Positions 14,401-16,693 of a stretch of 62,695 nt of DNA are shown here, piece after piece. Below the pieces are notes generated by a model that was not told the origin of the DNA, searched no databases, and saw nothing but the letters and a program-made list of their open reading frames with translations. Source of the stretch: Macrostomum lignano (Eukaryota); NCBI GenBank assembly GCA_002269645.1, contig NIVC01004054.1, positions 1 to 62,695 of the forward strand, in the 5' to 3' direction. The stretch's first letter is position 1; every line of letters starts with the position of its first letter. The translations under genes and the position numbers were made by a program.

Positions 14401-16693
14401 GCCAGCATTAGCTGGGGTAATTAAGGGGGTGTGGCGACACCCCCTCCAGTCCTTGGACTGAACAGCCGTACGCAGTCTTCAGATGCGCCGCTTAATAGCT
14501 GCGGTTGAGCTGTCGGTAGCACATCTGCCCATTAGGACAGATGTAATCCATAATAGTTATTTTCATTACCTTCAACACCTCAACGGTGACACCCCACCCC
14601 CATCGCGTCTTCTTCTCACACCCTGTTCTTTCCTACTTCGTAAAATGGCAAAACCGCATAAAAATCGCAGACTTCATTCTTATCTACCCTAACTTCCTTT
14701 ATTTTGTTTCTGAATTCTCCTAATTTTTGTCACCATTTGCCTCCCTCCTTGGCTCACTACTGACAGTAGCAACCCCGCTCAAATAGATTTTCTACTGATT
14801 TTTTCTATTTGCAGGGCAAAAAAGGCGACACTGGCGATCGGGGCCGCCTGGGACCCAGCGGGCCGCTCAGCCCCGGCGGCACCATCTTCGTGTTCCACTC
14901 GATGAACGTCACGCCTCCCGCCTGCCCCTCCGGCACCCGGGTGGTGCGCCTGGGCTACAGCTTTGTAGGAGCCGCCTCTGGGGGCCGCACCTGGGCGCAG
15001 GACATGGGTGAGACGGGATGGACAGACAGACAGACAGACAGACAGACAGACAGACAGACAGACAGACAGACAGACAGACAGACAGACAGACAGACAGACA
15101 GACAGACAGACAGACAGACAGACAGACAGACAGACAGACAGACAGACAGACAGACAGACAGACAGACAGACAGACAGACAGACAGACAGACAGACAGACA
15201 GACAGACAGACAGACAGACACTCATGTGCACTGAGGCACACTGATACAGACCCTGGGATACTGAGACACACTGAGGCAGACACTGAGACACACTGAGGCA
15301 GACACTGAGACACACTGAGGCAGACACTGAGACACACTGAGGCAGACACCAGAGCAAACCTGTCCCACCCGCAGGCTCGATGGGGTCATGCAAGGACAAG
15401 TTCAGCAGCATGCCGTACATTCAGTGCGACACGGAGCGCAGCTGCCACTACTCCAGCCGCAGCGAGCGCTCCTATTGGCTGGCCACTCGCGGGAAAACCA
15501 TGGCAAATCCGCTACCAGTCGACGATCCCAAGGTTCGCGAGCAGGTGTCCAGGTGCGCAGTCTGCGACCTACACGCGGACGTCATCGCTGTGCACTCGCA
15601 GTCCGCTCTGCAGCCCGACTGTCCGCCGACTTGGGAGGAGATGTGGATCGGCTACAGCTTCCTGATGGTGCGGATCCGGGATGGGGAGCTCGGGGCTGCT
15701 GCATGCGAACGGATCGGATTCGTGTGGCTGGGAAAAACCTCAAGCTGGGATACTTAAAGATGAGCTTGAAATCCCAGAATGAGACTGGACTCTTTGCCTC
15801 AGGATAACATGGGACCTGCATAATGCTATCTACCTGACTGCTTGCCATCCTATCTATATCGCAGCCCAACTACCAACCTTGGGATCATTAAATGCACTGG
15901 CACTTATGGGGAAATCCAAACCCTTTCATTTGCTTACCTATGAGTAACTAATACATCAATCTGCCTACTAAACACCTAAACTACCTATCCACCTAACTAC
16001 TATATACTTACCTACCTATCGTTTTTCCTACCTACGAGCATCTACATACATATCTACCTACCTACCTGGTACATACCTACCTACCTACCTACCTAGATAT
16101 CTGCCTAACTACCTACCTATGTATCTACGCATCTACCTACCTATCTACCAACCTACCTACCTACCTACCTACCTACCTACCAATCTATCTACCTATCTAT
16201 CTACCTATCTACCTACCACCTACCTACCTACCTACCTACCAATCTATCTACCTATCTATCTACCTATCTACCTACCACCTACCTACCTACCTACCTACCA
16301 ATCTATCTACCTATCTATCTACCTACCTACCTACCTACCTACCTACCTACCTACCAATCTATCTACCTATCTATCTACCTATCTACCTACCACCTACCTA
16401 CCTACCTACCTATCCACCAAACCGTGCAGTTCACCACCGGTGGCACGGGCAGCGGCCAGGACCTGGTGTCGCCGGGCAGCTGCATGCCCTACTTCAGCTT
16501 CACCCCCATGCTGGAGTGCAACAACCAGGGCGGGCGCTGCCACCACTGGCAGGACTCGATCACCTACTGGCTGTCCGTGATTCCCGAGGACGCGATGTTC
16601 AAGAAGCCGCTGCCGACGTCCACCAGCTCGGACTCGGTGGAGTCGAGCGTGTACAACCGGATCAGCAGGTGCAAAGTGTGCAAGCGGACTTAA
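2460..16693 (+). CDS. col4a: Type IV (basement membrane) collagen alpha chain, 25 coding exons, ~1756 aa
   Basis: Exons joined in phase: 2460-2558 (signal peptide [33 protein letters not shown]), 3010-3069 (7S-like [18 protein letters not shown]), 3547-3681, 4138-4182, 4274-4336, 4433-4555, 5080-5178, 5529-5731, 6111-6164, 6635-6742, 7281-7748, 8055-8378, 8630-8711, 8806-8921, 9526-9982, 10518-10909, 11052-11303, 11425-11679, 11760-12309, 12992-13225, 13625-13759, 13883-14148, 14815-15007, 15375-15667, 16430-16693 (TAA). Interrupted Gly-X-Y throughout, then a two-lobed NC1 domain. One nt is missing at ~5722-5724. alpha1 vs alpha2 class is not resolved. Confidence 0.97.
2701..2980. repeat. ~12-nt degenerate repeat (gtgtcagtgcca) in a collagen intron
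   Basis: Direct inspection. Confidence 0.9.
3140..3500. repeat. 34-nt minisatellite in a collagen intron
   Basis: Unit caggggtggctgctgaggcaccagtgagaagagc and variant ..gacaccggggagaagagc. Confidence 0.95.
3720..4022. repeat. 11-12-nt repeat (cccgaaactcca)
   Basis: Direct inspection. Confidence 0.92.
4581..5030. repeat. (GACA)n microsatellite with CACTAA interruptions
   Basis: Direct inspection; the same type occurs at 15021-15219 and 31005-32077. Confidence 0.98.
5328..6085. repeat. Two intronic minisatellites flanking collagen exon 8 (22-nt at 5328-5497; ~30-nt at 5750-6085)
   Basis: Units ccatgatagtgggtcaggcatg and tatctatgacctccccattatctcactatt. Confidence 0.85.
6310..6615. repeat. AT-rich 24-28-nt repeat (ttctgatcggagtatttaaacaaa)
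   Basis: Direct inspection. Confidence 0.88.
6903..7268. repeat. 20-nt minisatellite ending just before the acceptor
   Basis: Unit tagcgtgtcatctaatctca, ~18 copies. Confidence 0.95.
7783..8038. repeat. 29-nt minisatellite in a collagen intron
   Basis: Unit gtggcgccaagctataaatgcaggtctca. Confidence 0.93.
8401..8586. repeat. (GTAA)n microsatellite
   Basis: ~45 units starting 22 nt after the donor at 8379. Confidence 0.98.
9050..9500. repeat. (CAAT)n microsatellite
   Basis: Direct inspection. Confidence 0.97.
10409..10517. repeat. 46-nt tandem duplication containing the acceptor
   Basis: cccaccgctgccaccagctagacgcaatagcagtgacattgttcct x2.4. Confidence 0.92.
12409..12758 (+). mobile_element. 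tRNA-derived SINE family A, diverged copy in a collagen intron
   Basis: Colinear with the reverse complement of 43074-43436 (e.g. gtcacattaatttggggct.aattggaatctc..cttggctctgc; ttaaagtgcgccag). Confidence 0.75.
13265..13580 (-). mobile_element. 3' fragment of a LOA/R1-type LINE in a collagen intron
   Basis: LNRRDTRAV followed (with frameshift) by [34 protein letters not shown], a C-x2-C...H..C knuckle typical of these LINE C-termini. Confidence 0.7.
14257..14555 (+). mobile_element. tRNA-derived SINE family B with CORE-like central domain
   Basis: Head gcagccgagtggtttgagcg...ggttcgttccc, then gtgtccttgagcaagtcgcttaac...cacccagctgtaaaatggg, which resembles the CORE/MIR-type central domain. 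A second copy is at 53825-54122. Confidence 0.78.
14880..16693 (+). CDS. Collagen IV C-terminal NC1 (C4) domain, split over 3 exons
   Basis: FHS..P.CPSG..GYS..AQDMG|[39 protein letters not shown]|..[32 protein letters not shown]; all 12 NC1 cysteines are present. Confidence 0.98.
15021..16415. repeat. NC1-intron repeats: (GACA)n 15021-15219, 22-nt unit 15230-15350, (CTAC/CTAT)n 15990-16415
   Basis: Direct inspection. Confidence 0.92.

What the first reader, a model, noticed from the sequence alone, without database searches (positions are those of the whole stretch)
16590..16693. NC1 lacks the Lys211 needed for the sulfilimine crosslink
Established: the peroxidasin-made S=N bond links Met93 to Lys/Hyl211 (human alpha1 ..MFKKPTPSTLK211AGELRTHVSRC) and is widely conserved. 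Seen: this chain reads [26 protein letters not shown], with no Lys between KKP and SRC and a 4-residue insertion, while one Met survives in the Met93 loop (KTMANP). Inference: this chain cannot act as the sulfilimine acceptor, so hexamers are crosslinked asymmetrically or by another chemistry.
Basis: partly seen in the sequence, partly recalled or inferred. Interest (0 to 1): 0.7.

Follow-up and report, generated by a model that had tools for sequence, protein, structure and literature searches.

The report
Flatworm collagen IV chain lacking crosslink residues
This is the tail of a very divergent basement-membrane collagen (type IV) gene of a Macrostomum flatworm that has lost the lysine, and at the aligned position also the methionine, used for the sulfilimine crosslink. 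That is unusual for a bilaterian but has precedents, including one planarian collagen IV chain.

Summary
Window 16430-16693 is the last exon of a 23-exon collagen IV-type gene (3547-16693, + strand). The exons found encode 1440 residues of interrupted Gly-X-Y and a 229-residue NC1. The tail reads [26 protein letters not shown], with no Lys between KKP and SRC and four extra residues. The Lys211 column holds Ser, against Lys in 117 of 120 homologues.

The "surviving" Met in KTMANP aligns with Pro90, not Met93. The Met93 column holds Pro, and a Met somewhere in that loop is expected by chance about 46% of the time. So both crosslink residues are missing at their homologous positions.

The fold and all 12 cysteines are kept (AlphaFold2 pLDDT 89; TM-score 0.91 to solved NC1 structures). 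The domain is nevertheless the most divergent of the set: 33 of 105 highly conserved columns are changed, and it is 41% identical to both the α1-like and α2-like classes. Neighbouring genes place the window in Macrostomum.

Most likely this is a fast-evolving flatworm paralogue that takes no part in sulfilimine crosslinking. There are precedents: planarian col4-3, Hydra, ctenophores, sponges and placozoans. It is a new member of a known kind, of modest interest. I could not test paralogues, peroxidasin or expression.

The parts
3547..16693 (+). Collagen IV-type α-chain gene, the part visible in the window: 23 exons and 5010 coding bases including the stop, encoding 1669 residues. The N-terminal signal peptide and 7S exons were not found.
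   Evidence: The exon chain came from Gly-X-Y ORF segments and AG/GT boundaries. The joined CDS has one stop, at its end. Every intron is GT-AG. GC3 is 0.75.
3547..14148 (+). Twenty exons of the interrupted triple helix: 3547-3681, 4138-4182, 4274-4336, 4433-4534, 5080-5178, 5529-5651, 6111-6164, 6635-6742, 7281-7748, 8055-8378, 8630-8711, 8806-8921, 9526-9982, 10518-10909, 11052-11303, 11425-11679, 11760-12309, 12992-13225, 13625-13759, 13883-14148.
   Evidence: The collagenous part as a whole has 1440 residues, 20 interruptions, 8 Cys and 17 N-x-S/T sequons. The donors of exons 4433-4534 and 5529-5651 are the least certain.
14815..15007 (+). Junction exon: the last Gly-X-Y triplets plus NC1 residues 1-44 and the first base of codon 45.
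   Evidence: Acceptor tttgcag|GGC, donor ATGG|gtgaga (phase 1).
15375..15667 (+). NC1 exon 2 (residues 45-142). It contains the SSRSE motif (the ASRND column) and the SM3 loop [14 protein letters not shown].
15500..15511 (+). Codons for M-A-N-P. The Met (15500-15502) lies in the Pro90 column and the Pro (15509-15511) lies in the Met93 column.
16430..16693 (+). Last exon, NC1 residues 143-229 plus the stop codon.
   Evidence: Acceptor cgtgcag|TTC.
16595..16672 (+). The SM3' loop of the finding, [26 protein letters not shown]. The Ser codon in the Lys211 column is at 16625-16627. The loop is four residues longer than in human α1 and rich in Ser, Thr and acidic residues.
   Evidence: This is the lowest-confidence stretch of the AlphaFold2 model (residues 201-220, block means 67 and 77).
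16727..16732 (+). AATAAA polyadenylation signal, 34 bases after the stop codon.
   Evidence: This supports 16430-16693 being the true terminal coding exon.

Best explanation
The finding is the C-terminus of a lineage-specific, fast-evolving collagen IV α-chain of a macrostomid flatworm (Macrostomum lignano or a close relative).

Shown: the NC1 domain keeps the two-subdomain fold, all 12 cysteines and the 48 columns that are invariant in the family. The chain also has a triple helix of about 1440 residues with interruptions typical of collagen IV. Both sulfilimine positions are substituted. Lys211 is replaced by Ser inside a loop that is 4 residues longer and rich in Ser, Thr, Asp and Glu. Met93 is replaced by Pro. 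Several trimer-trimer interface positions tied to chloride binding have also drifted (A74S, N77S, D78E, R179G, N187D, Y189I).

Inferred: the chain still trimerises through NC1 and probably still pairs head to head, but it cannot be welded by peroxidasin at its own Met93 and Lys211 sites. NC1 hexamers that contain it are held non-covalently (ions, domain swap, disulfide-stabilised subunits). If it co-assembles with canonical chains, any crosslinks come from those partners alone. The loss looks like part of a general relaxation or re-tuning of the interface rather than a targeted change.
For: - Identity as collagen IV: Pfam C4 twice, E = 1e-62. PDB NC1 chains match at E = 1e-55 to 1e-59. AlphaFold2 mean pLDDT is 89.2 and pTM 0.86. 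Foldseek TM-score is 0.91 at rmsd 1.8 Å to 5nax, 1li1 and 8tys.
- Intact gene: 5010 coding bases over 23 GT-AG exons with a single terminal stop, GC3 0.75, and AATAAA 34 bases downstream.
- Residues: the Lys211 column is Ser against 117/120 Lys, and the Met93 column is Pro against 115/120 Met.
- General divergence: 33/105 conserved columns are changed, against a mean of 2.1. The query is 41% identical to both α1-like and α2-like NC1s, which are 61% identical to each other, and it has the longest terminal branch in a neighbour-joining tree.
- Taxon: the neighbouring GPCR is 56% identical in protein and 72-88% in DNA to M. lignano. A retrotransposon reverse transcriptase is 93% identical to M. 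lignano A0A1I8IQ35.
- Precedent: planarians have seven col4 genes in a platyhelminth-specific cluster outside the α1/α2 classes, and col4-3 lacks the sulfilimine residues (PMC8072372). Hydra, ctenophores, sponges and placozoans lack the bond (PMC5395295).
Against: - I found no orthologue or transcript. The best database hit is 43% identical and the last exon alone finds nothing. Conservation of the Lys-less loop and expression are therefore untested.
- The loop Met at position 87 might still reach a partner's Hyl211, because these loops are flexible (residues 196-210 lack electron density in a figure legend of PMC6211539). I could not obtain model coordinates or a hexamer model.
- R76 and E175, the core of the chloride switch, are retained. 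The interface may therefore be less altered than the count of substitutions suggests.
- I could not establish whether Macrostomum has canonical col4 chains or peroxidasin.
Confidence: 0.6

Rival explanations
1. One reading: the chain has lost only the Lys half. Its loop Met (KTMANP) still serves as the sulphur partner for Hyl211 of a different, canonical chain across the trimer-trimer interface. Hexamers would then be crosslinked asymmetrically, with fewer bonds.
For: A Met is present in the SM3 loop. The TMANP stretch resembles the human SMAP stretch if indels are allowed. Loop flexibility is documented (PMC6211539). Peroxidasin is annotated in other flatworms, for example in tapeworm secretomes (PMC8308605).
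Against: The loop has the same length as in α1-like chains and aligns without gaps, which puts the Met in the Pro90 column and Pro in the Met93 column. Moving the Met into register needs three compensating indels. A Met somewhere in the loop is expected by chance in 46% of cases. No canonical partner chain was identified.
Confidence: 0.15
2. The chain is crosslinked by a different covalent chemistry that replaces the sulfilimine bond. Candidates are an intermolecular disulfide as in ctenophores, a lysyl-oxidase or transglutaminase link, or a bridge through modified Ser/Thr in the enlarged acidic loop.
For: Ctenophores replaced the bond with a cysteine loop (PMC5395295). The inserted loop [11 protein letters not shown] contains one S-x-E motif (SVE), the kind of site secretory-pathway kinases use; that link is my own inference. 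Drosophila NC1 hexamer assembly is triggered by divalent cations (PMC10694668), so assembly mechanisms do vary.
Against: NC1 has exactly the 12 canonical cysteines and no spare one. No feature in the sequence points to a specific alternative bond. The enlarged loop is the least confidently modelled region.
Confidence: 0.08
3. The gene is a decaying or non-functional paralogue, or its function no longer involves NC1 hexamers. The loss of Lys211 and Met93 then reflects relaxed constraint and has no mechanistic meaning.
For: The NC1 is by far the most divergent of the set (33/105 conserved columns changed; longest branch). No matching protein or transcript-derived fragment exists among 5.8 billion database proteins. 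The N-terminal exons were not found in the window.
Against: The 5010-base reading frame is uninterrupted across 23 exons with canonical splice sites. All 48 family-invariant columns, including the 12 Cys, are kept. GC3 of 0.75 is typical of the coding sequence seen here. The fold is predicted with confidence.
Confidence: 0.1
4. Gene-model artefact: the real transcript ends in another terminal exon that carries the canonical TLKAG motif.
For: The exon model rests on sequence alone. No cDNA was available.
Against: A tblastn search of 122 NC1 sequences against the whole window found NC1-like coding sequence only at about 14875, 15374-15670 and 16430-16690. The exon joins in frame to the upstream exon at the position where homologues continue. 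It ends in the family's C-terminal SRC-x-V-C motif followed by a stop, and AATAAA lies 34 bases downstream.
Confidence: 0.03

Closest known systems
Planarian (Schmidtea mediterranea) collagen IV family col4-1 to col4-7, especially col4-3 (Chan et al. 2021, PMC8072372)
   Same: Both are flatworm collagen IV chains outside the conventional α1-like and α2-like classes, with an interrupted triple helix and an NC1. Col4-3 is reported as the one planarian chain without the hydroxylysine and methionine of the sulfilimine bond.
   Different: I could not obtain the planarian sequences, so orthology with col4-3 is untested. This chain comes from Macrostomorpha, an early-branching flatworm lineage by my own knowledge. 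No flatworm sequence was among the named best 120 hits.
Canonical bilaterian and cnidarian collagen IV α1/α2 NC1 domains (human 1LI1 and 5NAX, Drosophila 8TYS, Nematostella)
   Same: Two C4 subdomains, 12 Cys, the same fold (TM-score 0.91), R76 and E175 retained, an MFKKP motif identical to vertebrate α1, and the α1-like loop length at SM3.
   Different: Met93 is Pro. Lys211 is Ser, with a 4-residue insertion. The ASRND motif reads SSRSE. N187D, R179G and Y189I are changed. Identity to either class is only 41%.
Collagen IV of Hydra, Ctenophora, Porifera and Placozoa (Fidler et al. 2014 and 2017; PMC5395295)
   Same: These NC1 domains lack Met93 and Lys/Hyl211, and no sulfilimine bond forms.
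   Different: Apart from Hydra, a cnidarian, those are non-bilaterian lineages, and this one is a bilaterian. Ctenophores compensate with an added cysteine loop, which is absent here (12 Cys only).
Unnamed divergent NC1 proteins in public assemblies
   Same: Both lack Met93 and Lys211 (N/D and V/R in those columns). They are among the most divergent NC1s in the set, and P0119 is the query's neighbour-joining sister.
   Different: They are only about 40% identical to the query, so the grouping is probably long-branch attraction. Their source organisms are unknown (Logan runs ERR14651318 and SRR26360271).

Membership tests
Collagen IV α-chain | C-terminal NC1 made of two tandem C4 subdomains (PF01413) | tested here: met
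   Pfam C4 with two stretches, E = 1.1e-62, 209.5 bits against a cutoff of 27.
Collagen IV α-chain | Twelve conserved NC1 cysteines (six per subdomain) | tested here: met
   Cys at NC1 positions 17, 50, 62, 68, 105, 108, 127, 160, 172, 179, 223 and 226. All fall in invariant columns of alignment A1.
Collagen IV α-chain | NC1 three-dimensional fold | tested here: met
   AlphaFold2 pLDDT 89.2 and pTM 0.86. Foldseek TM-score 0.90-0.91 at rmsd 1.8 Å to 5nax, 1li1, 1m3d and 8tys.
Collagen IV α-chain | Long triple helix (about 1400 residues) with many interruptions of Gly-X-Y | tested here: met
   1440 collagenous residues with 20 interruptions. The exon model was made by hand, and two donors are uncertain.
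Collagen IV α-chain | N-terminal 7S domain (Cys- and Lys-rich start) and a signal peptide | tested here: inconclusive
   No candidate exon lies in window 1100-3546, which is mostly satellite repeats. The 5' end probably lies upstream of the window.
Collagen IV α1-like or α2-like class | Clusters with one of the two ancestral classes | tested here: not met
   Mean identity is 41.0% to α1-like and 40.6% to α2-like NC1s, which are 61% identical to each other. The query has the longest terminal branch. This agrees with the separate platyhelminth cluster reported in PMC8072372.
Sulfilimine-crosslinked NC1 hexamer | Lys/Hyl at position 211 | tested here: not met
   Ser in that column. There is no Lys anywhere between K201 and R222.
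Sulfilimine-crosslinked NC1 hexamer | Met at position 93 | tested here: not met
   Pro in that column. The only loop Met lies in the Pro90 column.
Sulfilimine-crosslinked NC1 hexamer | Peroxidasin encoded in the genome | not testable with these tools
   None lies in the 62.7-kb window, and the source genome cannot be searched here. Peroxidasin is reported from tapeworm secretomes (PMC8308605).
Chloride-dependent NC1 hexamer assembly | Residues R76, D78, E175 and N187 and the ASRND motif | tested here: inconclusive
   R76 and E175 are kept. A74S, N77S, D78E, N187D and Y189I are changed, at columns that are otherwise 59-98% conserved (Y189 is the 59% one; the other four are 88% or more).
Ctenophore-type cysteine-loop crosslinked NC1 | Additional cysteines forming an intermolecular loop | tested here: not met
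   Only the 12 canonical Cys are present.
Spongin short-chain collagen | Short collagenous domain attached to an NC1-like domain | tested here: not met
   The collagenous part has at least 1440 residues.

The most novel reading that the evidence does not exclude
Macrostomid flatworms may build basement-membrane collagen IV networks whose NC1 junctions are not sulfilimine-crosslinked. That would be a secondary loss inside Bilateria of a bond described as conserved from cnidarians to humans. The enlarged acidic Ser/Thr loop and the altered chloride motif might provide a different, possibly ion- or phosphate-dependent, way of holding trimers together. This requires that the chain is a major expressed collagen IV, not a minor paralogue.
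Probability: 0.1. Interest if true: 0.6.

Novelty: new member of a known kind. Interest (0 to 1): 0.3.

Why it matters
The sulfilimine bond is presented as essential for tissue evolution and as conserved across Animalia from cnidarians onward (PMC13098435). Bilaterian chains that lack both residues are natural experiments on how far a collagen IV network can do without it.

Macrostomum lignano is transparent, regenerating and transgenic, and has RNAi (PMC7053086 for transgenesis). That makes it a good system to ask whether such a chain forms uncrosslinked junctions, and in which tissues. As it stands, this is one more exception in a fast-evolving gene family where an exception has already been published. 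The value is incremental.

Tried and rejected
- A search with the last exon alone found no protein sharing three 5-residue words. No orthologue or transcript fragment is available.
- A scan of JGI metagenome contigs with the NC1 gave 101 pattern matches, none confirmed.
- Synteny: the two M. lignano loci carrying the GPCR paralogues have no NC1 coding sequence within 10 kb.
- Rfam on the whole window found nothing.
- I first suspected a ctenophore, a sponge or another early-branching animal, because the NC1 is about 41% identical to everything. I dropped this once the GPCR and the reverse transcriptase pointed to Macrostomum.
- An alternative terminal exon or a second, head-to-head col4 gene in the window: rejected by tblastn and by the Gly-X-Y scan, which found collagen coding only on the + strand between 3547 and 14868.
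- N-terminal exons: not found in window 1100-3546.
- Fidler et al. 2014 (PMC3890831) is not held, and the supplement of Chan et al. 2021 is not held. I could not see which planarian residues replace Met and Lys, or whether flatworms were assayed for NC1 dimers.
- AlphaFold2 coordinates are not exposed to scripts, so I could not measure the Met87 geometry.
I could not list the Macrostomum col4 paralogues.
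Full report
**What is in the sequence**

Window 16424-16693 is an open frame ending in ...[35 protein letters not shown]. It is the last of three exons that together encode a complete 229-residue NC1 domain:
- 14815-15007 (junction exon);
- 15375-15667;
- 16430-16693.

The splice sites are canonical (tttgcag|GGC...ATGG|gtgaga; cccgcag|GC...ATG|gtgcgg; cgtgcag|TTC). Pfam finds the collagen IV C4 domain twice (E = 1.1e-62). Every solved NC1 chain in the PDB matches at E = 1e-55 to 1e-59 and about 41% identity.

Upstream, Gly-X-Y coding is found only on the + strand, from 3547 to 14868. 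I chained it into 20 further exons using AG/GT boundaries that preserve the glycine register. The joined coding sequence is 5010 bases with one terminal stop. It gives 1440 collagenous residues with 20 interruptions, followed by the NC1. GC3 is 0.75. An AATAAA lies 34 bases past the stop. The signal peptide and 7S exons are not in window 1100-3546, which is mostly satellite DNA. The 5' end probably lies outside the window.

**Checking the observation**

Eighteen residues separate KKP from SRC, against 14 in human α1, and none of them is Lys. The absence of Lys211 therefore does not depend on where the gap is placed. In a MAFFT alignment with 120 database homologues plus human α1, the Lys211 column is Lys in 117 of the 120 homologues and Ser in the query.

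The second half of the observation needs correcting. The SM3 loop has the same length as in α1-like chains and aligns without gaps. The Met of KTMANP then falls in the Pro90 column, and the Met93 column holds Pro, against Met in 115 of 120 homologues. The domain is 4.4% Met, so at least one Met in a 14-residue loop is expected 46% of the time. At homologous positions both residues of the bond are gone.

**The loss in context**

The query differs from the consensus at 33 of the 105 columns that are at least 90% conserved among 58 homologues. The others average 2.1 and reach at most 18. The changed positions include residues that line the trimer-trimer interface:
- the ASRND motif reads SSRSE (A74S, N77S, D78E);
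- N187D, R179G and Y189I are also changed;

All 48 invariant columns, including the 12 cysteines, are kept. AlphaFold2 models the fold with confidence (pLDDT 89.2, pTM 0.86). The enlarged loop, residues 201-220, is the least confident part. Foldseek superposes the model on human, bovine and Drosophila NC1 structures at TM-score 0.90-0.91 and rmsd 1.8 Å.

The domain is 41% identical to both the α1-like and the α2-like NC1s, which are 61% identical to each other. It carries the longest terminal branch in a neighbour-joining tree. With roughly a third of conserved positions changed, losing both crosslink residues is not clearly a targeted event.

**Whose gene it is**

The NC1 has no close relative among 5.8 billion proteins. 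The best hit is 43% identical, and the last exon alone finds nothing. The neighbours settle the taxon:
- A two-exon rhodopsin-family GPCR (27996-28805 and 32902 to about 33180) is 56% identical to two Macrostomum lignano proteins. The next hits are tapeworm and schistosome neuropeptide-F-like receptors. Its exons are 72-88% identical in DNA to the M. lignano loci.
- A degenerate non-LTR retrotransposon on the minus strand (22880-25060) is 93% identical to M. lignano A0A1I8IQ35.
- A dispersed repeat is shared with M. lignano at about 80%.

The window therefore comes from Macrostomum. I cannot say which species. [quoted passage not shown]

**How it most likely works**

The bond joins Met93 in the SM3 loop of one monomer to Lys/Hyl211 in the SM3' segment of the monomer facing it across the equatorial plane (PMC6211539). 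A chain without either residue cannot be welded to its partner at those sites.

My best reading (confidence 0.6) is a fast-evolving flatworm paralogue that still folds and trimerises through NC1. Its head-to-head junction would be held non-covalently, or by crosslinks that canonical partner chains contribute if it forms heterotrimers.

The steps that are shown are the sequence, the alignment columns, the fold and the gene's integrity. The steps that are inferred are trimerisation, hexamer formation and the absence of a bond.

**Rivals**

It needs three compensating indels or a flexible-loop argument.
- A replacement chemistry (0.08). There is no spare cysteine, and the only hint is one S-x-E motif in the acidic loop.
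- A decaying paralogue (0.10). The intact 5-kb frame and the retained invariant residues argue against it.
- A wrong terminal exon (0.03). tblastn finds no other NC1 coding sequence in the window.

**Comparison with what is known**

The field describes the bond as conserved throughout Bilateria and in Cnidaria except Hydra, and absent in ctenophores, sponges and placozoans (PMC5395295). A 2026 study again stresses conservation of Met93 and Hyl211 in the aligned model species (PMC13098435).

The flatworm exception is already on record. Chan et al. (PMC8072372) found seven planarian col4 genes in a platyhelminth-specific cluster outside the α1/α2 classes. They state that all except col4-3 contain the hydroxylysine and methionine. 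The present chain fits that picture: an expanded, divergent flatworm family with at least one member that has dropped the crosslink residues.

Assembly rules are known to vary between lineages. Drosophila NC1 hexamer assembly is triggered by divalent cations, and one group of chloride sites has been lost there (PMC10694668). Two other unnamed NC1 proteins in public assemblies, P0119 and P0105, also lack both residues.

**Verdict**

It understates the change, because the Met position is gone too, and it overstates the novelty.

This is a new member of a known kind and I score interest at 0.3. The most novel reading still open is that macrostomids as a lineage have given up the bond. That needs the paralogue census, a peroxidasin search and NC1 biochemistry, none of which could be done with the tools available here.

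Noticed in passing
window 27996-28805 and 32902-33180 (+): A two-exon rhodopsin-family GPCR with DRY and NPxxY motifs. It is 56% identical to two Macrostomum lignano proteins and 35-38% identical to tapeworm and schistosome neuropeptide-F-like receptors. The intron holds large tandem arrays.
   Followed up: partly
window 22880-25060 (-) and 58712-58987 (+): A degenerate non-LTR retrotransposon with its reverse transcriptase and RNase H ORFs in different frames. The reverse transcriptase is 93% identical to M. lignano A0A1I8IQ35. A second short reverse transcriptase fragment lies near 58.7 kb, below the Pfam cutoff.
   Followed up: partly
whole window, e.g. 48756-52461, 40780-42257, 45488-47283, 33368-34492, 29979-30567: Tandem repeats are extremely dense, with 31 Tandem Repeats Finder rows scoring at least 400. 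One array has an 11-bp unit in 337 copies. Long tetranucleotide microsatellites sit in the collagen introns: (CAGA)113 at 4581-5032, (CAAT)115 at 9039-9500, (GACA)50 at 15021-15220 and (CTAC)94 at 16042-16412. Several generate long spurious ORFs.
   Followed up: no
window 14298-14488 and 53906-54087 (inverted); L002 16739-16922: A dispersed repeat of about 190 bp. One copy lies in a collagen intron and one, inverted, lies 39 kb downstream. It is about 80% identical to an M. lignano contig. Window 35441-35667 also matches M. lignano DNA (76-81%) with no convincing ORF.
   Followed up: no
P0119 on L004 6001-6864 (Logan ERR14651318) and P0105 on L003 468-1238 (SRR26360271): Two other divergent NC1 proteins in public assemblies lack both Met93 and Lys211. 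P0119 is encoded as one uninterrupted 287-residue ORF on a 12.7-kb contig densely packed with ORFs that have no Pfam hits. That is odd for an animal collagen gene. The source organism is unknown.
   Followed up: no
window 3547-14148 (+), collagenous exons: The triple helix is poor in proline (7.6%) and rich in Lys, Asp and Glu. It has 17 N-x-S/T sequons, mostly NGT within Gly-X-Y, and 8 cysteines inside or beside interruptions. This suggests heavy N-glycosylation and disulfide knots along the helix.
   Followed up: no
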